Shown here: piece after piece, positions 2,930-31,233 of the stretch
How the letters are laid out: each line of letters opens with the position of its first letter
Position numbering within the stretch: the stretch's first letter is position 1
Virus record (IMG/VR): IMGVR_UViG_3300028364_000014
Location: 124,001 to 188,000 of that record
DNA length: 64,000 nt
Reading direction: 5' to 3' (one strand)
Translations under genes and position numbers: made by a program
Notes under the pieces: generated by a model
Told to the model about the DNA's origin: nothing
Databases searched by the model: none
What the model saw: the letters and a program-made list of their open reading frames with translations, nothing else

Positions 2930-4816
2930 ATGTGTGGAATTCTTGGAGCACTTCGTTTCGGAGAACTTAATGATTCAACCAACGAAGAACATAATTGGAT
3001 GAGAAAAGCTAGTTTGCTAATTGCAGCTGATATTCTAGAAAAAACTGAAAAAAGAGGAAAAGATGCTACTGGAATATCGGCTCTTTTTAATGATGGAAGA
3101 TTTATTTTACAAAAAATGGGTACAGACGCTAAAACCTTTATGAGTCGCTTTGGTGGTAAAAAGGAAGATTTTCAAGGGTTTATGAAAATTCTTCGTGAAT
3201 ATGAGTCAACTCTAAAGATTATTACTGGACATTGCCGTAAAAAATCAGTAGGAGGTTCTTTTGACAATGTTAATAATCATCCAGTTAAAGCTAATAAAAT
3301 AGTTGGACTACATAATGGTACTCTAAAAAATCAAAACATCATTTTTGAAAATCTTAAATGTAAAAGAGACGGGGATGTAGACAGTGAAGCTATTTTTAGG
3401 CTTCTGGATTATTATACTAAAGGAGGAAAGGAACCTTTTACTATGGAAATGGTAGAAGATACTTTTAATAGGCTAGAAGGTACTTTTAGTATTATTGCTT
3501 ACAATATTGATAATCCTAATCAAGTAGTAGTTGGTCGTGACGGTAGACCAGCCGAATTTTGTCTTGTTAAACCACTAAAGACAGTATTTATTGCTTCAGA
3601 AAAAGCTTATATTGAACACGCTCTTTGGAGATATAATCAAACAGCAGCTTTATTTTATGATGGGCAGTATCCTAGAATTAAATCAGCAGACGCAGTGTTT
3701 AAAACACTAATAGATGATACTGCTGGTATTTTTGATCTTACAAAAGAAATTGATGAAAATTCTGAAATGGCGGATTTACTAGACACTAAAAAATTACCTC
3801 TAACAAGTCAAAGAATATGGAAAGTGCCTGTTAAATCGACTGTTTATCCTAATGATGCTTACAGAAATAGACAACAAACTGATGACAAAAAAAAAGTAAC
3901 AGTGGGTGGTCAGGGGGAACCCCTAAACACTGCAGCATCAGACAAAAGTATGACAGGAACTACCAAAACCAAGGATGCTGCGGAATCTAAAAGAAGATTT
4001 GTAGCAAGAGTATGGAATGAGGATTTAAATAAATTTATTCCAAAAACAGATATCAAAGCCATGGAAAGCACACAAGTAATTAATTTGGAAAAAAAAACCA
4101 TCAATGATTTAACATCAGTATTTAGAGAGGTTACAAAAGAACAAAATGATCCTTTTAATAAATCAGAACAAAACGCATTGGTGGAAAAGAAATTCACACA
4201 CGAGGTTGAAGAGTATAAAAGTGGAAAAACAGCTGTACTAAATAACATTATACCTATAGAGGCTAAAGCTTTAGAGGTCGAAGTAAACCAATTAAAAGTG
4301 ATTAAAGAAAAGACAGCTTCAGCACGTTTAGAAAGTAAAGATCATCTAGACGGGCTAAAGGCTACTATTCAAGCATCCAAAGAATTACTAAGATTGGACA
4401 CTATTGATGAAGTAGCTGAATTACTAAATGCGGATGTAGAAAATATTGAAAAACTATCATTACCTGCAATTACAAACAGACTCTTGAAAGCCCAATTTTC
4501 TAAAATGTTTCTTACTGGCTGGATGGCTAAATGTGATGCATTAAAAACACAAACAATCGATAAGCATATAGAAGCAATCGATAAACACGTGGAAGAAGAA
4601 AAAGAGGTGAAATCTAGAAAACATATCAGAGTATTAAAACATATTGTAAACGCGCTCGGCCAGTACGATGAAAAACAATTAGTTTCTGAATGGGCCAAAA
4701 AATGGGCTACTTCCTATTCTGAAATCAATACAGAGACTCTATCCGCGGTGTTTAATGAGGGAGACCTTCGTGATAATGACAAAGTTACTGAAATAATGAA
4801 ATACGTAAAAAAGTAA
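2930..4816 (+). CDS. Class II glutamine amidotransferase with long C-terminal extension
   Basis: MCGILG start, RGKDATG, GHCRKKS, NNHP, GLHNG, DSE and RDGRP motifs; about 330 extra C-terminal residues. Confidence 0.9.
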   Translation: MCGILGALRFGELNDSTNEEHNWMRKASLLIAADILEKTEKRGKDATGISALFNDGRFILQKMGTDAKTFMSRFGGKKEDFQGFMKILREYESTLKIITGHCRKKSVGGSFDNVNNHPVKANKIVGLHNGTLKNQNIIFENLKCKRDGDVDSEAIFRLLDYYTKGGKEPFTMEMVEDTFNRLEGTFSIIAYNIDNPNQVVVGRDGRPAEFCLVKPLKTVFIASEKAYIEHALWRYNQTAALFYDGQYPRIKSADAVFKTLIDDTAGIFDLTKEIDENSEMADLLDTKKLPLTSQRIWKVPVKSTVYPNDAYRNRQQTDDKKKVTVGGQGEPLNTAASDKSMTGTTKTKDAAESKRRFVARVWNEDLNKFIPKTDIKAMESTQVINLEKKTINDLTSVFREVTKEQNDPFNKSEQNALVEKKFTHEVEEYKSGKTAVLNNIIPIEAKALEVEVNQLKVIKEKTASARLESKDHLDGLKATIQASKELLRLDTIDEVAELLNADVENIEKLSLPAITNRLLKAQFSKMFLTGWMAKCDALKTQTIDKHIEAIDKHVEEEKEVKSRKHIRVLKHIVNALGQYDEKQLVSEWAKKWATSYSEINTETLSAVFNEGDLRDNDKVTEIMKYVKK

Positions 4817-4834
4817 CAAAGGAGAAATATTAAC

Positions 4835-6130
4835 ATGACTAGTAAAAAAGAACTAATTTTGGTAACTTCGGCTAGAATGGAAAAAAATAAAAAACCTAAC
4901 CGTAATGAAAATAACCTTATAAGATTATCTGCAGTTACTAGAAATAGTTTGGGCTTTGGAGACAGTGTTGAAGTCTCAGGAAAACATTTAAAGTCTTTAG
5001 ACACTTTTCAAGCTTTTTCTAAGGACATAAAAGATTTACGTGAACAGGGCTCATTTACAGATAGTGAAATGAAAAGAATTGGCTTCGTAACCCCTGAAAC
5101 TTTTCGAAGTCTTACTGGTAAAAACAGTCTATTGGAAAAAAATAATATTTGGATTTCCAAAACAATACAAACAACACTAATTGGTGCAGACCCAGAATTT
5201 CTTTTATTTGATAATAAAGGGGACGTAGTGCATGCAAATAACCACCTTTCTAAACCTGGACTAGTAGGATCAGATGGCGCTATGATTGAAGTACGCCCTG
5301 AACCTTCAACTACTCCTGAAGGGTTGGTTCAAAATATAAAATATATTTTTTCTAATCAAGAATTAATGCGTGATGTCCAAGATTTCCAGTGGTTAGCTGC
5401 AGTTTACTATAAAAATGATCAAAGAGACTACCCAGTTGGTGGACATATCCATCTTGGAAATCCTGTAAGCATCAAAAAGCTTTCTGGTCCTCAAAAACAT
5501 TTTATGTTTGGTGTTTTTAATAAAATACTTGACGAATTACTTTCCTTACCTATGATTAAATTGGATGGGCAAGACTTGGGTGAGTGTCGTAGATCAAAAT
5601 GTAAAATGGCTATGGGAAACCGGGGTTTTGGCTATTACGGAGAATGGCGTCCATGTGATGGAAGATTAGAACATCGCACATTAAGCGGTTTATGGCTTAT
5701 GCACCCTTCAGTAGCGGAGGCTGTATTAGGTACTGCCAAAGCCATAGCAGATGAAATGTTTAGTCTTGTGGATGATAAAGGGTATGATTTAAACTATATT
5801 AAAAGTCCTGGTATTGAATTTAATGATCATAAGTATTTATATAGGGCTGAGTTTGATGATTGGGACAAAATAGGCATTGCTAAAGATTTAAGATGTGTTC
5901 AATCCTCTGCTTATATGCGTTCTATGCTTAATACCTCTAAAGCAAGTAGTATTACCAAACCATTTCTTACTAAATGGTATAATAATATAAAAAAACTTAG
6001 TACTTATAACAAATACGCAAAGCACATTGACATGCTTTATGCTATTCTATCAATGCCCAAAAAGAAAATCTCTAGCATAGGGCTAGATTTAAAGAAAAAT
6101 TGGGTAGAAGAAAATGAACTTTTGTTGTAG
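4835..6130 (+). CDS. phiEco32-like COOH-NH2 ligase type 2
   Basis: IGADPEFLL, GSDGAMIEVRPEP, GGHIHLG and LEHRTLS motifs typical of this family. Confidence 0.85.
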   Translation: MTSKKELILVTSARMEKNKKPNRNENNLIRLSAVTRNSLGFGDSVEVSGKHLKSLDTFQAFSKDIKDLREQGSFTDSEMKRIGFVTPETFRSLTGKNSLLEKNNIWISKTIQTTLIGADPEFLLFDNKGDVVHANNHLSKPGLVGSDGAMIEVRPEPSTTPEGLVQNIKYIFSNQELMRDVQDFQWLAAVYYKNDQRDYPVGGHIHLGNPVSIKKLSGPQKHFMFGVFNKILDELLSLPMIKLDGQDLGECRRSKCKMAMGNRGFGYYGEWRPCDGRLEHRTLSGLWLMHPSVAEAVLGTAKAIADEMFSLVDDKGYDLNYIKSPGIEFNDHKYLYRAEFDDWDKIGIAKDLRCVQSSAYMRSMLNTSKASSITKPFLTKWYNNIKKLSTYNKYAKHIDMLYAILSMPKKKISSIGLDLKKNWVEENELLL

Positions 6131-6138
6131 AATCAGCA

Positions 6139-7296
6139 ATGTTTAAAAAAATTTTAAATTATATTAAAAAAGGACTTGACATGAATAAAAAAGATGTTTA
6201 TATTACGTACAGTAGTGCCACAAATGTAACTGGAGAAAAATTACAAGCAGCTTTAAAAATTGCAGGTGGTTTAAAAATTCCTTCAAAAAAACAAAAACTA
6301 ATTATTGGGTGGGGAGCTAAAACAGACGAAGACGTAACTTTTCCAAAAGATACTATTGTATTAAACCATCCAAACGCCATCAGGACTAACCGCAATAAAC
6401 TTGGGGCTCTCGCACTTATGCTTGCTGGGGATGTATCAATAGCCCCATTTTCACCAACTGAAACAGTAGAAACTGATATTGCTAGTGGAAAAATTACACT
6501 ACCGCTTATTGGAAGAACAAAATATCATCAAGGTGGTAAAGGGTTTTGGGTATGCCCTACACTTACACATGTTAAGGACGCTATCAAAAACAATGCTGCT
6601 TATTTTCAGGCAATGATTGAGATTAAAGACGAATTCAGGTTTCATGTTTTTGGAGATACTGTAATTTATGCTGTAAAAAAAGTTCAACGAACTCCAGAAG
6701 ATTTTGAAGTAGCATTTATAGAAGATGAGCTTGCACGTCAGAAAAAATTGTGGGAAAAGAATAATGAGGGACCATTTCAAGAGAATTTTGCAAAAGAAAT
6801 ACTACGTAGACAAGCAAAAAATGCTACGGCTGGGGGTGCTAATATGATGGTACGCTCCAATAAAATGGGGTGGAGATTCTCTAGAATTAGTAAGCTAGAT
6901 AAAGCAGTTGAAGTTGAAGCTATAAAAGCTGTAAGAGCACTAGGTCTAGATTTTGGTGCCGTTGATTGTTGTACTGATGCTAATGGAGTTCCTTTTATTA
7001 TTGAAGTAAATACTGGACCTGGGCTTGAGGGCACACCATTTGATAATTATGTAAAAGCTTTTGAAGCTTTACTAGCAGATAAACCAAAAGCTATTCCTAC
7101 CAAACCTATATCTCCAGCTGCAAACATGGCTGCTGCAAAAACTAAAATTGGAAACTCTTCTATGGGTGCTGCTAAAAAAGCACTACTTCAGCAACAGCTC
7201 GGGAGACTTTCTAGTATTCTAGAAGAGACCCCTGATGATGAAATCGACACTTTGGAACGACTGGCAAAACACGTTATATTCGGTTCCGACTCATAA
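6139..7296 (+). CDS. ATP-grasp peptide ligase (RimK/YheCD-like)
   Basis: RTKYHQGGKG, EFRFHV and LGLDFGAVD...IIEVNTGPG ATP-grasp motifs. The true start may be the ATG at 6181. Confidence 0.85.
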   Translation: MFKKILNYIKKGLDMNKKDVYITYSSATNVTGEKLQAALKIAGGLKIPSKKQKLIIGWGAKTDEDVTFPKDTIVLNHPNAIRTNRNKLGALALMLAGDVSIAPFSPTETVETDIASGKITLPLIGRTKYHQGGKGFWVCPTLTHVKDAIKNNAAYFQAMIEIKDEFRFHVFGDTVIYAVKKVQRTPEDFEVAFIEDELARQKKLWEKNNEGPFQENFAKEILRRQAKNATAGGANMMVRSNKMGWRFSRISKLDKAVEVEAIKAVRALGLDFGAVDCCTDANGVPFIIEVNTGPGLEGTPFDNYVKAFEALLADKPKAIPTKPISPAANMAAAKTKIGNSSMGAAKKALLQQQLGRLSSILEETPDDEIDTLERLAKHVIFGSDS

Positions 7297-9638: not shown

Positions 9639-10436
9639 ATGATAAAATACAAAGTAATAACAGAAAAAGACTTAACTAGCACTGATACAGAAGCATTCCC
9701 TAAGTATTTACTTGGAGATACACTAATTGATGCAGAAGAGACCTTTACTTGTTTTGAAAAATACATCAATAATCTTGCTACTTCTTACCATTTTATAACA
9801 GGAATAGATAAAAGTGAGTTTTTTGGTGATGCTGTAATAGCCTTAGGCAAAGCCAGAAGAGACTTTGATATTAAAAGAAGTAATAATTTTATAGCTTATG
9901 CAAAATTTCTTATCGTGGATTCTATGAATGAGTGTATAAGAAATAACATAGCCATTGTTAAAATACCTTCGTATATCTATAAAGCTCATAGAATTATAGC
10001 AAGGATCAAATTACTTGCTGTAAATAATTGTGCAAATATTACTGATGTATTATATAGTGATGATTATCTTGTTTCTGAATCGGTAAAATTAAAAATTAAT
10101 GAGGATAAAAATAAATTGAAAAGAGCCGCAGAGAGGGCAAATTTACCTTATAGAGAGCTTATTAAACGAGCCGAGTACCTTCCATTGACGTTGAGTAAAG
10201 AGGATGGTATGAAGAACTTAATACACTCTAACAAGACACACGACGCAATGTTAGCAAAAATTGTTGTTGATACAATAACCCCATTACTAGATAAAGATGA
10301 AAAATCTATTGCAGAAATGTTGATGAAGGATTTACCCAGATCAGAGATTAGTAAAAAGCTTGGAAGATCTGATGATTGGATTCTTAGTAGAATGGATAAA
10401 ATTAAAAATAAAATTACTGGTAAATTTTTAAAATAA
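9639..10436 (+). CDS. Phage RNA polymerase sigma factor (sigma70/FliA-like)
   Basis: Region 2-like segment (FDIKRSNNFIAYAKFLI..M) and a C-terminal HTH (EISKKLGRS...). Confidence 0.75.
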   Translation: MIKYKVITEKDLTSTDTEAFPKYLLGDTLIDAEETFTCFEKYINNLATSYHFITGIDKSEFFGDAVIALGKARRDFDIKRSNNFIAYAKFLIVDSMNECIRNNIAIVKIPSYIYKAHRIIARIKLLAVNNCANITDVLYSDDYLVSESVKLKINEDKNKLKRAAERANLPYRELIKRAEYLPLTLSKEDGMKNLIHSNKTHDAMLAKIVVDTITPLLDKDEKSIAEMLMKDLPRSEISKKLGRSDDWILSRMDKIKNKITGKFLK

Positions 10437-10467: not shown

Positions 10468-11859
10468 ATGAGAACATTAGAAGCTTTATGTAAACTTAAT
10501 GATACAAAGGCTGAGGTGTATCTTGTTGGGGGCTTCGTTAGAGATTTCATAAGAAGAAAGAAAAATAAAGACCTAGATATAGTAGTACGCTATATGGCAT
10601 TGTCTCAAATTTCTGACTTTTTAAGTACACACGGTAAAGTAAAAGAATTAATAATACATCGTAATCATGGACCAAAAGCTGACCCAATTAAATTTTTGTC
10701 TTTTTTCGGAAGTGATGGTGTAGAAGCTCAAATTACAACTGTGAAGGGTTCCGGTGAAGATCGAAACCCAAATGCGACGCTAAAACAAGACGGAAAACAT
10801 AGAGATTTTACAATAAATTCAATGTATCTTCCTGTTAATAATATAACATCAAAAGCAGTTATTGATCATTTTGGTGGAAAAAACGATATTGCTGCAAAAC
10901 AAGTCTTAACCGTAGGATCAGCAAAAGCAAAATTTGTAAAATCTCCAATTCGTATATTACGAGCATTTTCCATAGCCGCTCGAACAGGCTACAACATACA
11001 TGATCATGTTAAAGTAGCCATAAGTGCAAATGTACATCTATTAGCCGGAGTGCCTATGGAGGCTATTAGGGCTGAATTTGAGGACATACTTTTAAGTGCT
11101 AAACCATCAAAATATTTTAAAATGATGCAAAAACTTGGGGTATTAAAAATGATACTTCCAGAGCTAGAAGCTACTGTAGACTGCAAACAAGACAAAAGAT
11201 ACCATAAATACAACGTATTTGAACACTTGTTATACTCATGTGATAATATCGAGCCAGATTTAATTTTACGTTTAGCAGCAATTCTACATGATATTGGAAA
11301 GCCTGCTTCACGAAATAAAATTAATAATCACGTTACCTTCTATAAACATGAGGTTTATGGGGCTAGACTAGCTCGCGTTATACTTAAACGATTAAGGTAC
11401 GACAAGGTAACTATCAACAAAGTAACTCATTTAGTAAGAATGCATATGTACCACTATACCAGAGAATTTACTGATGCAGCTGTACGTAGATTCATTGTAA
11501 ATGCAGGTATTACTAAAGATAATATAGAAAATTTGGCGGATCTTCCATTATTTAAAGTAAGAGCAGCAGAACGGCTTGGAAATGGGTTTAAGAAAACCAA
11601 AAAAACCCAAAAGCAGTATGATTATGAGGATAGAATTAAATCAGTGTTTGAATCTAGTGCTGGATTCTCTATAAATGATTTAGCTATTGACGGTAATGAC
11701 CTAATGGACACTTTTAGTATGCCTCCTGGTAGAAATATCGGAGAACTTTTAAAGTATTTACTTAGTCTTGTAATGAGTACACCGGATATTAATAATAAAA
11801 AAGATCTTCTTAGGGCATCACTTGAATTTATTATAAATGAAAAAGAAAAACATGAATAA
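10468..11859 (+). CDS. cca: CCA tRNA nucleotidyltransferase with HD domain
   Basis: YLVGGFVRD, DLDIVV, RDFTINSM and IRILRAF motifs, plus H..HDIGK and HM HD-domain residues. Confidence 0.9.
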   Translation: MRTLEALCKLNDTKAEVYLVGGFVRDFIRRKKNKDLDIVVRYMALSQISDFLSTHGKVKELIIHRNHGPKADPIKFLSFFGSDGVEAQITTVKGSGEDRNPNATLKQDGKHRDFTINSMYLPVNNITSKAVIDHFGGKNDIAAKQVLTVGSAKAKFVKSPIRILRAFSIAARTGYNIHDHVKVAISANVHLLAGVPMEAIRAEFEDILLSAKPSKYFKMMQKLGVLKMILPELEATVDCKQDKRYHKYNVFEHLLYSCDNIEPDLILRLAAILHDIGKPASRNKINNHVTFYKHEVYGARLARVILKRLRYDKVTINKVTHLVRMHMYHYTREFTDAAVRRFIVNAGITKDNIENLADLPLFKVRAAERLGNGFKKTKKTQKQYDYEDRIKSVFESSAGFSINDLAIDGNDLMDTFSMPPGRNIGELLKYLLSLVMSTPDINNKKDLLRASLEFIINEKEKHE

Positions 11860-11960
11860 TGAGCATTCAAAAAATATTAAAAACGATAAAAATATCAGAA
11901 AAAACTTCAATAGCTATTGATGTGATTCTTAGTAAGATTAGAGATGGTATTTTTGAAGAT

Positions 11961-12443
11961 GGGAGGTAGGAGTTTGACGATCATTGTAACGCTTGTTACA
12001 GTGTTTATATAGAGTAAATATGAAAACTCTGTGGTTCCAGGCTATCAACAAGTAGGGTTCCGAAAAGGAATTGCAAACGTGTTCGCCTATAGTAACTAAA
12101 CATTAAAGCATATACCAGGAATTGATGCGGTATCAGCTAATGTAACTGATTAGGGAAATAACTTTTAGGGGTTTTAGTTGACACATCCTCTTGACAGCAA
12201 AAATTCAACTCCGATCTTTTTATTAGAAGCTCATCTGCAATAATAAAATAATACATTAGCACATATACGAAGTAAAGTTCAAATCTTACTAATGTTTGAG
12301 AATTTCATGTTTTCTTGATAAAGATAAACAGAGGTTAAATTAGAAATCTTTATCTAAAAGCACGGAGGGAAGTCCAAAGGGACGTTATTATATAGATGGG
12401 ATACCTCATTGATATAATAAGTGGTTCGAATCCACACCTCCGA
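11961..12443 (+). ncRNA. tmRNA-like RNA (atypical)
   Basis: 5' GGGAGGTAGGAGTTTGAC resembles a tmRNA 5' end. The 3' GTGG-TTCGAAT-CCAC T-arm is followed by ACCTCC, which pairs with GGAGGT. Internal GCA AAC GTG TTC GCC TAT AGT AAC TAA (12073-12099) would encode the tag ANVFAYSN. No G3:U70 pair. Confidence 0.55.
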
Positions 12444-12698
12444 TAAGGTACTTATAAATTATAAAATACGTTATATAAAAACTGAACAATCGCCGTTACA
12501 CTGCACAGACTATTATAGTCAATAAGTCAGTAAAAACCGCTACTTCTGTCACTGTATATAAAATTTTATAACTTGAATCTTAAGTTCGAGTGGGTTAGGG
12601 GTGGGAAATTATAAGTTATCTTAAAAGTGAGTACAATTGGTTTTGTATTTATTTCTCCTTGATTAAAGCAAAGAGTTGTCATGGGCTCTTTGCAAACA

Positions 12699-12766
12699 GT
12701 AAAGACTGACTTGTTTTGGGTTATCATACTGGATTAGTACTCCCTAAAACTATTACTTGTCTTTAC
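12699..12766 (+). ncRNA. Degenerate copy of the recurring CGAA/ACUU stem-loop motif
   Basis: gtaaagac/gtctttac stem with TTATC and ACTT elements; TGAC replaces CGAA. Confidence 0.45.
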
Positions 12767-12874
12767 ATAAGCTAAATACAAGCTTATTTTCTCCTTAAAT
12801 TGTATAGTAAGGTAATTGGGTTGGCTAATTACCTTACATAAGTAACTTAAACCTTTAATAGTTGAGGAATTCGT

Positions 12875-13291
12875 ATGATAGAGAATTTACCATTTCTTTT
12901 TGATTCAGATAAAGATAGTCCTTTCGATGATTGCTCTATGGCAGAAGATAATCTAAATAACCATGATCCTGACTTGTTTCAAGATTATGACACCTTGGAG
13001 TATGAAAACATCTATGATGATTGGGGAATAATTGACCCAATTAAAGATGGAATAAGACGAGGGGTTGACCGGGTAGGTGGTGAAGATTTCATGAAATATG
13101 TTATGCCATTTGCAGAAACAATGGCTGATTATAGCTCAGAAATCCTTAAAACTCAGTCAGAAGATAAACAACTTAAGTCAATGCATGAGGAATTGACAGA
13201 AAATCGGAAAGAGTCTTTACCAAAAAGATCTTTTGAGCGGTTAGTATCAAAAGTAATTTCTGGTGAAATAAAACGTAATAATGTCAATTAG
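12875..13291 (+). CDS. Hypothetical acidic protein
   Basis: ORF with GAGG RBS. Confidence 0.65.
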   Translation: MIENLPFLFDSDKDSPFDDCSMAEDNLNNHDPDLFQDYDTLEYENIYDDWGIIDPIKDGIRRGVDRVGGEDFMKYVMPFAETMADYSSEILKTQSEDKQLKSMHEELTENRKESLPKRSFERLVSKVISGEIKRNNVN

Positions 13292-13307: not shown

Positions 13308-14075
13308 ATGAAGAACTTATCAATGATTGGTAGACCTGGTTCTAAATCCGTAAAAAATATAGTTAAAATTACTGGAATTCCAAAATACAGGAAGACTGCT
13401 AAAGTTCTTATTAATTATGGGTTGGCTGGTAAAAAAATGGAACAGTTTATTAGAAACTTCCCATCAGCTAGAGGAAAATATTTTATCAACCAGTATGTTG
13501 GATGTTCAAAATATAAAGCGGTGAAGGAAGCTGAAAAGCAAAAAATCAAAGTTCCAAAAACCTATATGGTACTTCCAAATTTTGTAGAAAGTTCTAACTT
13601 TCTTACCAAAAGATTACATTCCCAAGGTGGAATAGGTATTGCCAAAGTAATAGGTAAGACCAAAAAAAACAATGAGTATTTTCAAGAATTTATTAGTGAT
13701 CGTAGATATGAATTACGTGTTCATGCCTTCGCATGGATTCCCCAAGAAGAATGGGTTTTACAAAAACGTTTTGGGCTACCAAATGAAATTGCTTGGAATT
13801 TTCATAATGGTGGTAGATTTCAATCTATTAAAAGCACTAATGGTTATAATTTATTTAAAAAAGCTAAAGAAATTTCACAAAAGATTCTTAAAATACGAAA
13901 AATGGCATTTGGTGCTGTAGATTTAATAGTAAATTCTTCTGGGGAGATATATTTTATTGAAATTAATTCCGCTCCTGGGTTTACTGGATTAAGTCAACCA
14001 ATTTATGTAAACGCTTTTAATAAATTAAAATCTATGGCAGAAAATGATGTTTTGAAGTTGTGCAATAAAAGGTAA
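13308..14075 (+). CDS. Second ATP-grasp ligase (RimK-like)
   Basis: KRLHSQGGIG, YFQEFI...YELRVH and AFGAVDLI...YFIEINSAPG. Confidence 0.85.
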   Translation: MKNLSMIGRPGSKSVKNIVKITGIPKYRKTAKVLINYGLAGKKMEQFIRNFPSARGKYFINQYVGCSKYKAVKEAEKQKIKVPKTYMVLPNFVESSNFLTKRLHSQGGIGIAKVIGKTKKNNEYFQEFISDRRYELRVHAFAWIPQEEWVLQKRFGLPNEIAWNFHNGGRFQSIKSTNGYNLFKKAKEISQKILKIRKMAFGAVDLIVNSSGEIYFIEINSAPGFTGLSQPIYVNAFNKLKSMAENDVLKLCNKR

Positions 14076-19661: not shown

Positions 19662-19736
19662 GCAGAAGTAATTCAATTGGTAGAAAATTATCCACCAAGA
19701 TAATAAATGCAAGTTCAATCCTTGTCTTCTGCTCCA
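19662..19736 (+). tRNA. tRNA-Gly-like RNA with a 6-nt anticodon loop (CACCAA) and encoded CCA
   Basis: GCAGAAG/CTTCTGC acceptor, U73, CCA; TTATC-CACCAA-GATAA. Confidence 0.7.
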
Positions 19737-19866: not shown

Positions 19867-19937
19867 GCGAGTATAGTTCACTTTGGTAGAGCAATAGCCT
19901 TCCAAGCTATGTGCCAAGGTTCGACTCCTACTTCCCA
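19867..19937 (+). pseudogene. Degenerate tRNA-Gly(TCC)
   Basis: D and anticodon arms intact (ATAGC-CTTCCAA-GCTAT); the T-stem and 3' acceptor strand do not pair. Confidence 0.6.
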
Positions 19938-19981
19938 CACACGCCCCCCTAATCCAGGCAAACGACTATAAAGGAATTATT

Positions 19982-21628: not shown

Positions 21629-21762
21629 GAAGATTGTAGCTCAACTGGTTAGAGCGGCTGACCCAAAAATCTTTTTGCATCCACTTGTCACCCATCTATG
21701 ACCGAAGTAAAAAGTTTATCATACTTCAGCGAGTTGAGGGTTCAAATCCCTCCAATCTTCCA
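21629..21762 (+). ncRNA. tRNA scaffold with a 64-nt structured insert in the anticodon loop
   Basis: AAGATTG/CAATCTT acceptor, canonical D and T arms, and a GCTGA/TCAGC stem enclosing 21662-21725; G-1:C73. Confidence 0.75.
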
Positions 21763-22341
21763 AGTAAACCCTCTAATTTTCTAAGTAAAAAAAAATTAAA
21801 AACATTAAAGGTTCAAAACTTTTAGGCACTAAAGGAGATATTTTATGCTTTCATTTAAAGAACTAAAACAGTTGAAAATAAAAACTGATTTTTTAAATAG
21901 ACAAGTGAAGAAATTTTTTCTTTCTTTAAGTGGCAGTTGTGAATATAGAAAATTAAAACATCACGATAGTGGGGATTGGTACAAATGTACACATAAAAAT
22001 TATCACTTAGCAAAATATAGAGACATAACTCCTTGTGATGAAAAAGAATGTCCTAAATTAAATTAAAGATAATAATGCAGTCAGAACTCTACTTTTCAAC
22101 ATAGATCCCAAACTGTATATTAATAGGTATGGATTAGCAGATGATTCATATCAAAATCAAGTATCATGGTCGACTTATTTTTAATGAGTTGAAATTAAAA
22201 TTTGATGAACAACTTTATGGAGCACACCCGTATAGCTCAGCCAGGTGGGGGCCATCCAATCACAACGGGTAGTCAAAGGATAACTGGAATGGTTATCTAT
22301 AAGTAAACCCTAGCCAGTACTAAACTACTCAGTGTTGGCAC

Positions 22342-31158: not shown

Positions 31159-31233
31159 GCGGAAGTAATTCAATTGGTAGAAGCCTATCCTCCAAGATAG
31201 TTAATGCAAGTTCAATCCTTGCCTTCCGCTCCA
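31159..31233 (+). tRNA. tRNA-Gly-like RNA with a 6-nt anticodon loop (CTCCAA) and encoded CCA
   Basis: GCGGAAG/CTTCCGC acceptor, U73, CCA; paralog of 19662-19736. Confidence 0.75.

What the first reader, a model, noticed from the sequence alone, without database searches (positions are those of the whole stretch)
11961..12443. Atypical tmRNA-like gene directly downstream of the CCA-adding enzyme
Seen: a tmRNA-like 5' end, a terminal T-arm plus acceptor pairing, and an internal GCA-AAC reading frame giving ANVFAYSN*. It lacks the G3:U70 alanine determinant and the pre-T-arm GGAC, and the tag lacks the C-terminal Ala-Ala degron. Inference: a phage tmRNA derivative that rescues ribosomes with a non-degradative tag, or a decoy for SmpB.
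Basis: partly seen in the sequence, partly recalled or inferred. Interest (0 to 1): 0.65.

Follow-up and report, generated by a model that had tools for sequence, protein, structure and literature searches.

The report
Novel tRNA-shaped phage RNA, not tmRNA
The stretch after the CCA-adding enzyme gene of this 238-kb phage is not a tmRNA as drawn, but it does encode a previously undescribed, conserved RNA built from two tRNA-shaped modules, one of which carries a pseudoknot where the anticodon loop should be.

Summary
ARAGORN and Infernal/Rfam find no tmRNA. The proposed 5' end (11961-11979) is the tail of a 36-codon ORF followed by a terminator-like hairpin and is not conserved. In every relative the 3' acceptor strand pairs with a local partner 21-120 nt upstream, not with a distant 5' end. 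The 'tag' frame has no conserved stop or length and lies 5' of the tRNA-like domain.

The gap does hold a real RNA, found in 12 distinct related phage contigs, always after the CCA-enzyme gene. Its 200-nt core (12098-12297) has an acceptor-like helix, a D arm, a T arm and a long helix replacing the anticodon arm, capped by an H-type pseudoknot. Covariation is strong: 85% of cells paired against 40-51% in controls, and 24 of 32 pairs change on both sides. A second tRNA-like cloverleaf follows (12363-12442).

The core has tmRNA's order of parts but no tag template, no G3:U70 and no further pseudoknots. It matches no Rfam family.

The phage also encodes Ro60 and RtcB but no recognisable Y RNA. 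Distant relatives carry a YrlA-like RNA and Ro60 in the same slot. A tRNA-mimic partner of the phage RNA-repair set is therefore my leading, untested reading.

The parts
10468..11859 (+). CCA-adding enzyme gene. This is context only. It is the conserved upstream neighbour of the RNA in all 12 loci.
   Evidence: Pfam PolyA_pol, PolyA_pol_RNAbd, HD and tRNA_NucTran2_2. Gene order is conserved in relatives.
11859..11969 (+). Possible 36-codon ORF overlapping the CCA gene's stop codon (TAATG).
   Evidence: Translation. Several relatives have a called 60-69 aa ORF at the same place. No family match. Homology to those ORFs was not shown.
11982..12003 (+). Terminator-like hairpin (9 bp, 4-nt loop) followed by a T-rich run.
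   Evidence: Consensus scan: 1 found against 0.3 expected. Not conserved in the alignment.
12040..12097 (+). 5' domain. It holds a conserved flank (UAUCAACAAGUAG), a covarying hairpin (GUUCC 12057-61 / GGAAU 12067-71), and a conserved single-stranded motif UGCAAACGUGUUCGCC.
   Evidence: Alignments. The hairpin changes on both sides between loci (GUUCC/GGAAU, CAUC/GAUG, AUCC/GGAU, AUUC/GAAU, ACAU/AUGU), read by eye. RNAalifold on the loose alignment called nothing. The frame is not conserved.
12098..12105 (+). P1 5' strand (AAACAUUA), an acceptor-like helix. It pairs with 12290-12297.
   Evidence: RNAalifold. 6 of 7 pairs change on both sides. Own partner against swapped partner, p=1.3e-6.
12108..12128 (+). 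D-arm-like hairpin GCAU[AUACCAGGAAUUG]AUGC, preceded by AA. The loop is nearly invariant and contains the GG expected to meet the T loop.
   Evidence: Invariant columns. The stem is paired in 100% of cells, with a G:C to A:U double change in two loci.
12130..12156 (+). P2 5' strand: GUAU, GCUAAUGUA, CUGAU-AGGGA. This long irregular helix takes the place of the anticodon stem and starts one base after the D arm.
   Evidence: Duplex folding puts it within 0-1 nt of the D arm in all 11 loci tested, with unrelated sequences. Own against swapped partner, p=1.7e-7.
12167..12209 (+). H-type pseudoknot. Stem 1 is AGGGG 12167-71 with CCUCU 12187-91. Stem 2 is GUUGA 12177-81 (in loop 1) with UCAAC 12205-09. 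The third loop contains the conserved ACAGCAAAAA (12194-12203).
   Evidence: Stem 1 from RNAalifold. Stem 2 is present in all 11 loci, with full sequence changes such as GCUAU/AUAGC, GACGUA/UACGUC, GACUAA/UUAGUC, AAUCAC/GUGAUU. Own against swapped partner, p=5.5e-4. Pair counts including the pseudoknot.
12215..12268 (+). P2 3' strand: UCUUU-AUUAG, UACAUUAGC, AUAC. It includes a 25-nt unpaired internal loop (12227-12251) that is absent from the shortest relatives.
   Evidence: In L012 stem 2 runs straight into the P2 3' strand (0 nt between them), and L103 has only a 14-nt tail there that itself carries the P2 3' strand.
12269..12289 (+). GAAG (variable-loop position), then the T arm UAAAG-UUCAAAU-CUUAC. 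In this genome the stem has only 3 of 5 pairs. Relatives have 5-7 bp.
   Evidence: GUUCAAAUC is invariant or nearly so. 5 of 6 stem pairs change on both sides. The window's stem is weak.
12290..12297 (+). P1 3' strand (UAAUGUUU), directly after the T arm as in a tRNA. No encoded CCA.
12317..12354 (+). Hairpin (GAUAAAGAU / AUCUUUAUC) in the linker between the two modules. Present only in this genome; relatives have a ~20-nt linker.
   Evidence: Alignments.
12363..12442 (+). Second tRNA-like module, a cloverleaf. It has an acceptor-like stem (CGGAGG 12363-68 with CCUCCG 12437-42), a D-like arm (GUCC/GGAC), a 15-bp arm with a 4-nt loop in place of the anticodon arm, and a T arm (GUGG-UUCGAAU-CCAC, 12421-12435).
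   Evidence: Fold z = -4.6. The local partner carries compensatory changes across loci. In relatives it ranges from a plain minihelix with a T-like loop (L103, L002) to a four-way junction.
12443..12459 (+). Conserved trailer AUAAGGUACUUAUAAAU (relatives: AAAAGAUnCUUAUAA).
   Evidence: Alignments. It is not a recurring promoter motif: 32 matches against 27 expected in the window.
12460..12612 (+). Further conserved 3' domain. It has GAAAC..AAAGUAG-type repeats around a hairpin (AGACUAUUAUAGUC 12507-20), then GAAUCUUAAGUUCGAGUGGG (12575-94) and a G-rich end (12598-12607). Present in 10 of 12 loci. Whether it belongs to the same transcript is unknown.
   Evidence: Alignments. Absent from L102 and L107.

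Best explanation
The gene-free gap after the CCA-adding enzyme gene encodes, on the + strand, a structured non-coding RNA specific to one clade of uncultivated huge phages.

SHOWN
- The 200-nt core (12098-12297) has the connectivity of a tRNA: a 7-8 bp acceptor-like helix, two unpaired A, a 4-bp D stem with a conserved GG-containing loop, one linking base, a 4-nt variable-loop equivalent, and a canonical T loop stacked on the acceptor helix.
- The anticodon stem continues into a long irregular helix capped by an H-type pseudoknot instead of an anticodon loop.
- A second, shorter tRNA-like module follows (12363-12442).
- Conserved 5' and 3' flanking domains suggest a larger multi-domain RNA.
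- There is no conserved reading frame anywhere in it.

INFERRED
- Neither module encodes CCA, and both present an acceptor/T-arm stack. The modules are therefore probably recognised by tRNA-maturation enzymes: RNase P, a 3' endonuclease, and the CCA-adding enzyme encoded immediately upstream.
- The RNA probably acts by occupying a tRNA-binding site on a protein partner.
- The leading candidate partner is the phage's own Ro60/TROVE protein, which would make the RNA a functional analogue of a Y RNA within the phage's RNA-repair set (Ro60, RtcB, CCA enzyme, about 19 tRNAs).
- The partner and the function have not been tested.
For: Existence and structure:
- A homologous RNA lies in 12 distinct loci, always after the CCA-enzyme gene.
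- RNAalifold independently finds P1, the D arm, pseudoknot stem 1 and the T arm.
- P2 and pseudoknot stem 2 are present in all 11 loci tested, at anchored positions, with different sequences.
- Own-partner duplexes beat swapped partners: P1 p=1.3e-6, P2 p=1.7e-7, stem 2 p=5.5e-4.
- 85% of cells are paired against 40-51% with slid partners. 24 of 32 pairs change on both sides. 0 of 500 shuffles reach the observed value.
- G.U pairs occur in several helices, which fits the + strand.
- The RNA is single-copy in its genome and absent from 185,579 cellular genomes as far as the motif scan plus model can tell.
- The second module folds as a cloverleaf with z = -4.6 and has compensatory changes in its closing stem.

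Not coding:
- No conserved frame.
- No ORF of 40 aa or more on the + strand in the gap.

Link to Ro60 and RNA repair:
- The phage encodes TROVE/Ro60 (123 bits) and RtcB (157 bits).
- No YrlA scores above noise in the genome and nothing structured flanks Ro60.
- A Ro60 orthologue at 63% identity sits on a contig of the same length (318,366 bp) as the one carrying L010's RNA.
- In the distant relative L006 the layout is CCA enzyme, ~1 kb without genes holding a full-length YrlA match (34.9 bits, E=2e-4), then Ro60.
- Only three T-arm-like hairpins in the 238-kb genome lie outside tRNA genes, and one of them is here.
- Jumbo-phage RNA-repair kits of RtcB, CCA enzyme and TROVE 'with a tRNA-like partner' are described in PMC7824862.
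- A YrlA is cleaved by RNase P and receives CCA in M. smegmatis (PMC4201824).
Against: - No expression data.
- Folding energy alone does not set the AU-rich core apart from shuffles (z = -0.8 and -0.6).
- In this genome the first T stem is weak, with 3 of 5 pairs, and L008 has a bulge in P1.
- Against the Ro60 link: the Ro60 gene is 38 kb away, the YrlA model does not match, the GNCGAAN0-1G motif is absent in 10 of 12 loci, and the topology is the reverse of YrlA's.
- Co-occurrence with Ro60 could be checked for only one other genome, and only by matching contig lengths.
Confidence: 0.5

Rival explanations
1. A ~480-nt tmRNA derivative spans 11961-12443, closed by pairing of its two ends. It encodes the non-degradative tag ANVFAYSN and is used for trans-translation.
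For: The three sequence features exist. L105 has a similar short frame, ANVLT*.
Against: - No tmRNA call by ARAGORN or Infernal at any threshold tried.
- The 5' end is not conserved and overlaps an ORF end and a terminator-like hairpin.
- The closing helix is unique to this genome and has a G.G mismatch, while a covarying local partner exists in the relatives.
- The aligned frame ends after 4 to 27 residues, and in five loci it reads on into the D arm.
- The 'tag' lies 5' of the tRNA-like domain rather than after the pseudoknot.
- No G3:U70, and no SmpB in the phage.
Confidence: 0.03
2. A tag-less tmRNA relative. The redrawn core (12098-12297) is a reduced tmRNA: tRNA-like domain, P2 and pseudoknot 1 only. 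It would bind SmpB, EF-Tu or the ribosomal A site without adding a tag, either rescuing ribosomes or blocking host trans-translation.
For: - The order of parts is the same as in tmRNA, as recalled from established tmRNA structure: acceptor, D element, P2 5' strand, H-type pseudoknot with an A-rich third loop, P2 3' strand, T arm.
- Some members have a 20-25 nt unpaired stretch where the resume codon would sit.
- Huge phages do carry tmRNAs (PMC7162821, PMC12484599).
Against: - No sequence or structure match to any tmRNA model.
- It has a full D stem, which tmRNA lacks.
- No G3:U70 in P1 in the strands listed, so charging by AlaRS is not expected under the established identity rule.
- The unpaired stretch is missing in L012, L103 and L102.
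- No second to fourth pseudoknots.
- No phage SmpB.
Confidence: 0.15
3. One large ornate RNA of about 570 nt or more (roughly 12030-12612), in the manner of GOLLD or ROOL. The two tRNA-like modules would be embedded between a 5' and a conserved 3' domain, and the RNA would act as an RNA-only assembly or scaffold.
For: - Conservation runs through the whole gap in 10 of 12 loci.
- The RNA lies at the edge of the phage tRNA island.
- GOLLD and ROOL are phage RNAs near tRNA islands, and GOLLD can carry tRNAs in the linker between a variable 5' region and a conserved 3' region (10.1101/2024.12.08.627333).
Against: - No match to ROOL, nor to any Rfam family in the all-family scans, which should include GOLLD.
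- The 3' domain is missing in L102 and L107, so it is separable.
- There is no evidence for one continuous transcript.
- This reading is not exclusive of the best explanation.
Confidence: 0.17
4. Processing and stability signals only. The tRNA-like modules would be cleavage 'punctuation' that defines or protects the ends of the neighbouring mRNAs (CCA enzyme upstream, acidic protein downstream), with no role in trans.
For: - Position between two co-oriented genes.
- Acceptor/T-arm minihelices are sufficient substrates for RNase P and CCA-adding enzymes (established knowledge; the YrlA example is).
- The second module is reduced to a minihelix in L103 and L002.
Against: A mere cleavage signal would not need a nearly invariant D loop, a pseudoknot with a conserved third loop, or covarying P2 segments. 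A terminator-like hairpin separates the upstream gene from the RNA in this genome.
Confidence: 0.1
5. Unusual tRNA genes interrupted by an intron or a large insert in the anticodon loop, which would be spliced to give working tRNAs.
For: tRNA connectivity, position next to the tRNA island and the CCA enzyme.
Against: - ARAGORN in intron mode finds nothing at its default threshold in any of 12 loci, and the tRNA model gives no match.
- P2 continues as a helix with no 7-nt anticodon loop.
- I estimate the insert to be as short as about 70 nt in L103, too small for a group I intron by established size ranges.
- No group I or group II model matches.
Confidence: 0.03

Closest known systems
tmRNA (SsrA; Rfam RF00023 and the permuted forms)
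   Same: The ends meet in an acceptor-like helix stacked on a T arm. The anticodon arm is replaced by a long irregular helix (P2). An H-type pseudoknot with an A-rich third loop comes right after the P2 5' strand, as pseudoknot 1 does in tmRNA. The gene lies in a huge phage that carries translation-related genes.
   Different: - No tag template.
- No G3:U70.
- No second to fourth pseudoknots.
- A full D stem is present.
- AU-rich acceptor helix.
- No encoded CCA.
- No model match.
- No SmpB gene in the phage.
YrlA-type bacterial and phage Y RNAs (Rfam RF02553), the partners of Ro60
   Same: A non-coding RNA with tRNA-like D and T arms. The phage encodes Ro60 and RtcB. In distant relatives a YrlA-like RNA and Ro60 occupy the same position after the CCA-enzyme gene. 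[quoted passage not shown]
   Different: - Reverse connectivity. In YrlA the ends meet in the 'anticodon' stem and the acceptor is a closed stem-loop. Here the ends meet in the acceptor-like helix and the anticodon side is closed by a pseudoknot.
- No GNCGAAN0-1G motif in 10 of 12 loci.
- 38 kb from Ro60 instead of within 4 kb.
- No model match.
GOLLD and ROOL large ornate phage RNAs
   Same: Large, multi-domain, pseudoknotted RNAs of phages, sited at tRNA islands. GOLLD can carry tRNAs between a variable 5' part and a conserved 3' part.
   Different: No match to ROOL, nor to any other Rfam family in the all-family scans. The tRNA-like modules here are not real tRNAs. The length of the transcript is unknown.
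Canonical tRNA
   Same: An acceptor helix of 7-8 bp directly abutting the T stem, a T loop UUCAAAU, a D loop with GG, a single base between the D stem and the next helix, and a 4-nt variable loop.
   Different: No anticodon loop in either module. Position 8 is A rather than U. The tRNA model and ARAGORN do not call either module.

Membership tests
tmRNA | Recognised by dedicated detectors (ARAGORN; Infernal RF00023 and the related permuted models) | tested here: not met
   ARAGORN gives 0 tmRNA in the window, the region and 12 homologous gaps. Rfam gives no match at E<=10. On the whole genome the best RF00023 hit is 5 bits, elsewhere.
tmRNA | 5' and 3' ends pair into an acceptor stem next to a T arm, and this is conserved among relatives | tested here: not met
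For the redrawn core (12098 / 12297), an acceptor-like helix next to a T arm is present and covaries.
tmRNA | G3:U70 alanine identity pair in the acceptor stem | tested here: not met
   The P1 strands are listed. The window has C:G at the third pair when counted as a 7-bp stem, and no conserved G:U at that position in relatives. The second module has G3:C70.
tmRNA | Tag reading frame with a resume codon and a stop, lying after pseudoknot 1 inside the P2-closed loop | tested here: not met
No room for a template between pseudoknot stem 2 and the P2 3' strand in L012 (0 nt) or L103 (a 14-nt tail that is itself P2), and no shared frame in the others.
tmRNA | Pseudoknot 1 after the P2 5' strand | tested here: met
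   An H-type pseudoknot is present in all 11 loci tested, with covarying stem 2 and an A-rich third loop. This is a resemblance in topology only; homology is not shown.
tmRNA | Works with SmpB | not testable with these tools
   No SmpB gene in the phage record, which is 87% complete. The host is unknown and binding cannot be tested here.
YrlA / Y RNA | Match to the YrlA covariance model (RF02553) | tested here: not met
   No match at the locus. The genome-wide best hits are 14 and 10 bits inside the tRNA array, at the level seen in control genomes. L006 and L003 score 35-38 bits.
YrlA / Y RNA | Encoded within about 4 kb of the Ro60 gene on the same strand (PMC4201824) | tested here: not met
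   Ro60 is at genome 97788-98669 and the RNA at about 136,100, so 38 kb apart on the same strand.
YrlA / Y RNA | GNCGAAN0-1G motif near the 5' end (PMC4201824) | tested here: not met
   Absent from the whole gap in 10 of 12 loci.
YrlA / Y RNA | tRNA-like D and T arms | tested here: met
   Conserved D hairpin with GG, and a T arm with UUCAAAU.
YrlA / Y RNA | Permuted order: ends in the anticodon-like stem, T arm, then a closed acceptor stem-loop, then the D arm | tested here: not met
   The order here is acceptor 5' strand, D arm, P2 with pseudoknot, T arm, acceptor 3' strand. The YrlA consensus structure is shown.
YrlA / Y RNA | Bound by Ro60 | not testable with these tools
   Needs a pull-down or a binding assay.
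tRNA | Cloverleaf with a 7-nt anticodon loop; called by the tRNA model or ARAGORN | tested here: not met
   No tRNA call at the locus and none in ARAGORN's intron mode at its default threshold. Both modules lack an anticodon loop.
GOLLD / ROOL | Match to the family covariance model | tested here: not met
   ROOL RF03087 gives no match in the genome, although that search also hit nothing in the control genomes. The all-family scans at E<=10 and E<=1 give nothing. I did not run GOLLD by accession, because the accession I recalled was wrong.

The most novel reading that the evidence does not exclude
A new class of tRNA-shaped RNA in which the anticodon loop is replaced by a pseudoknot domain. It would be made by a clade of huge phages, matured by the phage's own CCA-adding enzyme, and serve as the missing RNA partner of the phage Ro60. 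That would make it a Y-RNA analogue reached by an evolutionary route other than YrlA's. Alternatively, it could be a tag-less tmRNA-like molecule that engages the ribosome.
Probability: 0.3. Interest if true: 0.8.

Novelty: new variant of a known kind. Interest (0 to 1): 0.6.

Why it matters
tRNA mimicry by non-coding RNAs is known in only a few forms: tmRNA, Y RNAs and viral tRNA-like ends. This would be another form, with tRNA's own connectivity and a pseudoknot at the anticodon end.

It lies in a phage clade that carries a whole tRNA-repair and maturation set (about 19 tRNAs, CCA-adding enzyme, RtcB, Ro60) but no recognisable Y RNA. That gives a concrete, testable candidate for what phage Ro60 proteins bind when no YrlA is present, and for why these phages keep their own CCA-adding enzyme.

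It also shows that standard annotation (ARAGORN, Rfam) is blind to this family.

Tried and rejected
- tmRNA detectors at every threshold available: negative.
- BLASTN of the gap against GenBank phages: no match. TBLASTN with the CCA enzyme found only relatives at 34% identity or less.
- Exact-pattern scans of the viral collection with the 3' arm, the D-loop motif and a 3'-domain motif gave 0, 2 and 7 loci. Only L093 (weak) and L094 (the same contig as L002) were relevant.
- The metagenome scan with the CCA-enzyme alignment returned mostly bacterial-type enzymes. The nearest ones (L013-L016) and the viral-collection loci L003-L007 lack the RNA.
- The D-loop motif in 185,579 cellular genomes gave 102 hits, about the number chance predicts by my estimate. 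None was confirmed by the model.
I used a model of the 5' half instead.
- RNAalifold on the 5' domain gave nothing because the alignment is loose.
- The trailer motif as a general phage promoter: not enriched.
- The downstream 138-aa protein as an SmpB-like partner: acidic, no family match.
- ARAGORN at a relaxed threshold gave inconsistent calls, which I disregard.
- My recalled accession for GOLLD (RF01998) was wrong; it is a group II intron fragment, so says nothing about GOLLD.
- One batch fold failed on a length limit and was not repeated.
Full report
SETTING

The window is bases 124001-188000 of a 237,910-bp IMG/VR virus record, 33% G+C and estimated 87% complete. It carries all 16 tRNA genes that ARAGORN finds in the genome, plus three more that only Rfam calls. 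The gene at 10468-11859 is a true CCA-adding enzyme. It is followed by 1,015 bases (11860-12874) with no ORF of 40 codons or more on the + strand.

CHECKING THE OBSERVATION

- GGGAGGTAGGAGTTTGACG at 11961-11979;
- a T arm at 12421-12435, followed by ACCUCC(G);
- a 6-bp complement between 11962-11967 and 12436-12441, with a G.G mismatch at the outermost pair;
- a frame reading ANVFAYSN* at 12073-12099.

The dedicated detectors do not call a tmRNA:
- ARAGORN finds none in the window, in the region, or in the homologous gaps of 11 relatives.
- Infernal finds no match to any of 4,227 Rfam families at E<=10 in the region.
- RF00023 run over the whole genome gives only a 5-bit hit elsewhere.

The CCA enzyme has many relatives at 50-61% identity on large metagenomic contigs. 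I fetched their loci. Gene order is conserved: RuvB-like ATPase, a sigma-factor-like protein, the CCA enzyme, sometimes a 60-69-codon ORF, a 650-1,100-base gene-free gap, a small acidic protein, then RimK-like ATP-grasp ligases.

Aligning the gaps shows four things.

1. In this genome it is the last three codons (GGG AGG TAG) of a 36-codon ORF that overlaps the CCA gene's stop. A terminator-like hairpin with a T-run follows at 11982-12003. The TTGACG inside it also scores as a -35-like hexamer, though promoter-like sites in the region are no more frequent than chance.

2. In the relatives examined, the 3' acceptor strand has a perfect partner 21-120 nt upstream. That pairing carries compensatory changes: window CGGAGG/CCUCCG, most relatives GGGAGG/CCUCCC, L105 GAGAGGU/ACCUCUC.

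3. The 'tag' lies on a motif conserved at the nucleotide level (UGnGGAACAUAUUA) that carries single-base indels. Read in the aligned frame, the peptides end after 4 to 27 residues, and in five loci they run on into the D arm.

4. The tag's stop codon overlaps the first bases of a conserved helix.

The tmRNA as drawn is therefore a coincidence of three unrelated pieces.

WHAT IS REALLY THERE

A profile built from the conserved blocks finds the same element after the CCA gene in 12 distinct loci. L009, L011, L111/L112 and L113/L114 repeat sequences already counted. L093 is a further weak match.

RNAalifold on alignment A3 independently predicts four helices with compensatory changes: an acceptor-like P1, a D-like hairpin, a G-rich stem and a T arm. 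Two more pairings vary in length and are misaligned by MAFFT, so I located them sequence by sequence with duplex folding between anchored segments:
- A long irregular helix, P2, starts 0-1 nt after the D arm and ends 0-1 nt before a conserved GAAN that precedes the T arm.
- A second pseudoknot stem forms between the loop of the G-rich stem and the bases just after a conserved ACnGCAAAAA.

Both are present in all 11 sequences tested, with unrelated sequences. For stem 2 these include GUUGA/UCAAC, GCUAU/AUAGC, GACGUA/UACGUC, GACUAA/UUAGUC, AAUCAC/GUGAUU and GUCGAU/AUCGAC.

Each sequence's own partner gives much more stable duplexes than partners swapped between sequences: P1 p=1.3e-6, P2 p=1.7e-7, stem 2 p=5.5e-4. 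Counting the whole structure, pseudoknot included, on A3 gives these numbers:
- 85% of cells are paired, against 40-51% when the partners are slid.
- 24 of 32 pairs change on both sides.
- None of 500 shuffles reaches the observed values for four of the five measures.

G.U pairs in several helices fit the + strand. Folding energy alone is unremarkable for these AU-rich sequences (z = -0.8 and -0.6), although L010's minimum-energy fold recovers the D arm, all P2 segments, stem 1 and the T arm. The case rests on covariation.

ANATOMY IN WINDOW COORDINATES

- P1: AAACAUUA 12098-12105 with UAAUGUUU 12290-12297.
- Two unpaired A.
- D hairpin 12108-12128. Its loop, AUACCAGGnnnUG, is nearly invariant.
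- One linking base.
- P2: 5' strand 12130-12156, 3' strand 12215-12268.
- Pseudoknot 12167-12209.
- GAAG, then the T arm 12273-12289 with loop UUCAAAU.

This is the connectivity and spacing of a tRNA, with the anticodon loop replaced by an extended helix and a pseudoknot. In this genome the T stem is weak, with 3 of 5 pairs. Relatives have 5-7 bp.

After a linker, which here holds a genome-specific hairpin at 12317-12354, comes a second module at 12363-12442. It folds as a clean cloverleaf (z = -4.6), with a 15-bp arm and a 4-nt loop in place of the anticodon arm. In relatives this module ranges from a bare minihelix with a T-like loop (L103, L002) to a four-way junction.

A conserved trailer follows (12443-12459). 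It is not a recurring promoter motif. In 10 of 12 loci a further conserved domain runs to about 12612. Upstream of P1, a 5' domain (12040-12097) has a hairpin that changes on both sides between loci, plus conserved flanks.

COMPARISON WITH KNOWN FAMILIES

tmRNA. The core shares tmRNA's order of parts: tRNA-like domain, P2, then an H-type pseudoknot with an A-rich third loop. It fails the defining tests, though:
- No model match.
- No G3:U70.
- No tag template. In L012 stem 2 runs straight into the P2 3' strand, and L103 has only a 14-nt tail there that is itself P2.
- No further pseudoknots.
- A full D stem.
- No SmpB gene in the phage.
Huge phages do carry ordinary tmRNAs that ARAGORN detects (PMC7162821, PMC12484599). 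This is not one of them.

tRNA. It is not a tRNA with an intron. ARAGORN's intron mode finds nothing at its default threshold, and I estimate the insert to be as small as about 70 nt.

Other families. No match to ROOL or to any other Rfam family, in this genome or in eight relatives. I mis-recalled GOLLD's accession, so for GOLLD I rely on the all-family scans.

Distribution. The RNA is single-copy in its genome. It is absent next to CCA enzymes at 50% identity or less. It was not found in cellular genomes by a motif scan followed by the model.

A LEAD ON FUNCTION

The phage encodes a Ro60/TROVE protein (genome 97788-98669, 123 bits) and an RtcB ligase (157 bits). Ro60 proteins work with Y RNAs. 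[quoted passage not shown]

In this genome:
- No YrlA scores above noise.
- The flanks of Ro60 are packed with ORFs, and the one 198-nt gap is unstructured.
- Only three T-arm-like hairpins lie outside tRNA genes, one of them in this RNA.

In relatives:
- In the distant relative L006 (CCA enzyme 45% identical), the CCA gene is followed by about 1 kb without genes that holds a full-length, sub-threshold YrlA match (34.9 bits, E=2e-4), and then by Ro60.
- L003 has a partial YrlA match beside a tRNA.
- A Ro60 orthologue at 63% identity lies on a contig of exactly the same length (318,366 bp) and sources as the contig carrying L010's RNA. About 22 orthologues at 54-63% identity mirror the identity range of the CCA-enzyme clade.
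- A comparative study of jumbo phages groups RtcB, the CCA-adding enzyme and TROVE 'with a tRNA-like partner' as one RNA-repair toolkit (PMC7824862).

I therefore take, as the most likely mechanism, a tRNA mimic that is handled by tRNA-maturation enzymes, including the neighbouring CCA enzyme, and that serves as an RNA partner in this toolkit, with Ro60 as the first candidate.

This is inference. The RNA fails the YrlA membership tests: model, distance, motif and topology.

VERDICT

The letters are there; the feature is not.
It is not a tag-encoding tmRNA, but a tmRNA-like, tag-less, tRNA-shaped RNA does lie inside the interval.
- The RNA family itself is well supported by covariation and appears to be undescribed.
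- Its function is open. I rank the readings as follows: Ro60 or RNA-repair partner, then one large ornate RNA (about 0.17), then tag-less tmRNA analogue (0.15), then a pure processing signal (0.1).

Noticed in passing
genome C1:97788-98669 (locus L115 1405-3051) and C1:83262-84509 (L116/L117), outside the window: The phage encodes a Ro60/TROVE protein and an RtcB RNA ligase. No Y RNA is detectable beside Ro60 or anywhere else in the genome.
   Followed up: yes
L006 4363-5681, with the YrlA match at 5043-5159; L003 7303-7368: In distant relatives the CCA-enzyme gene is followed by about 1 kb without genes that holds a sub-threshold YrlA-like RNA, and then by Ro60. L006 also has a T-arm-like element near 4786 and two repeats of GGUGUA(A)UAGUUC(UC)AGUUACUUCAC at about 5200-5320 that could be further small RNAs.
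   Followed up: partly
Present in 10 of 12 loci. Its structure was not worked out.
   Followed up: partly
L008 about 4500-4900 and L010 about 6260-6700: Tandem-like repeated units (AAAGACCGAAG..GGAUUAUCA..ACUUGUCUUU) fill the distal part of the gap in two relatives, and one degenerate copy is in the window at about 12700-12770. Rfam gives only a spurious nematode sRNA hit on them.
   Followed up: no
window 12779-12838: A hairpin GUAAGGUAAUU...AAUUACCUUAC lies just upstream of the next gene and is conserved in L008 and L010. It may be a regulatory or terminator-like element.
   Followed up: no
window 19662-19733, 19867-19939, 21630-21760; T-arm-like hairpin at 21807: Three tRNA-model matches that ARAGORN misses. 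One spans 131 nt and so carries a long insert. An extra T-arm-like hairpin sits just after it. The tRNA island may hold more unusual tRNA-like genes.
   Followed up: no
window 31159-31233: ARAGORN calls a tRNA with an undetermined anticodon ('cc'). Rfam scores it 48 bits as a tRNA.
   Followed up: no
window 9639-10436, 12875-13291, 13308-14075 and upstream genes in relatives: The neighbourhood points to translation or ribosome modification: a sigma-factor-like protein (phrog_351), a strongly acidic 138-aa protein with no family, RimK-like ATP-grasp ligases (phrog_2599, ribosomal protein S6 modification type), and a GNAT acetyltransferase in relatives.
   Followed up: partly
L003 5220-5589; L109 5046-5246: In phages that lack this RNA, the position after the CCA gene holds a cold-shock protein gene, and in L003 there is a cspA thermoregulator RNA match above the family threshold (79.9 bits).
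   Followed up: no
genome C1:73013: A weak isolated T-arm-like hairpin (UUUAG-UUCAAUA-CUAGG) far from the tRNA island.
   Followed up: no
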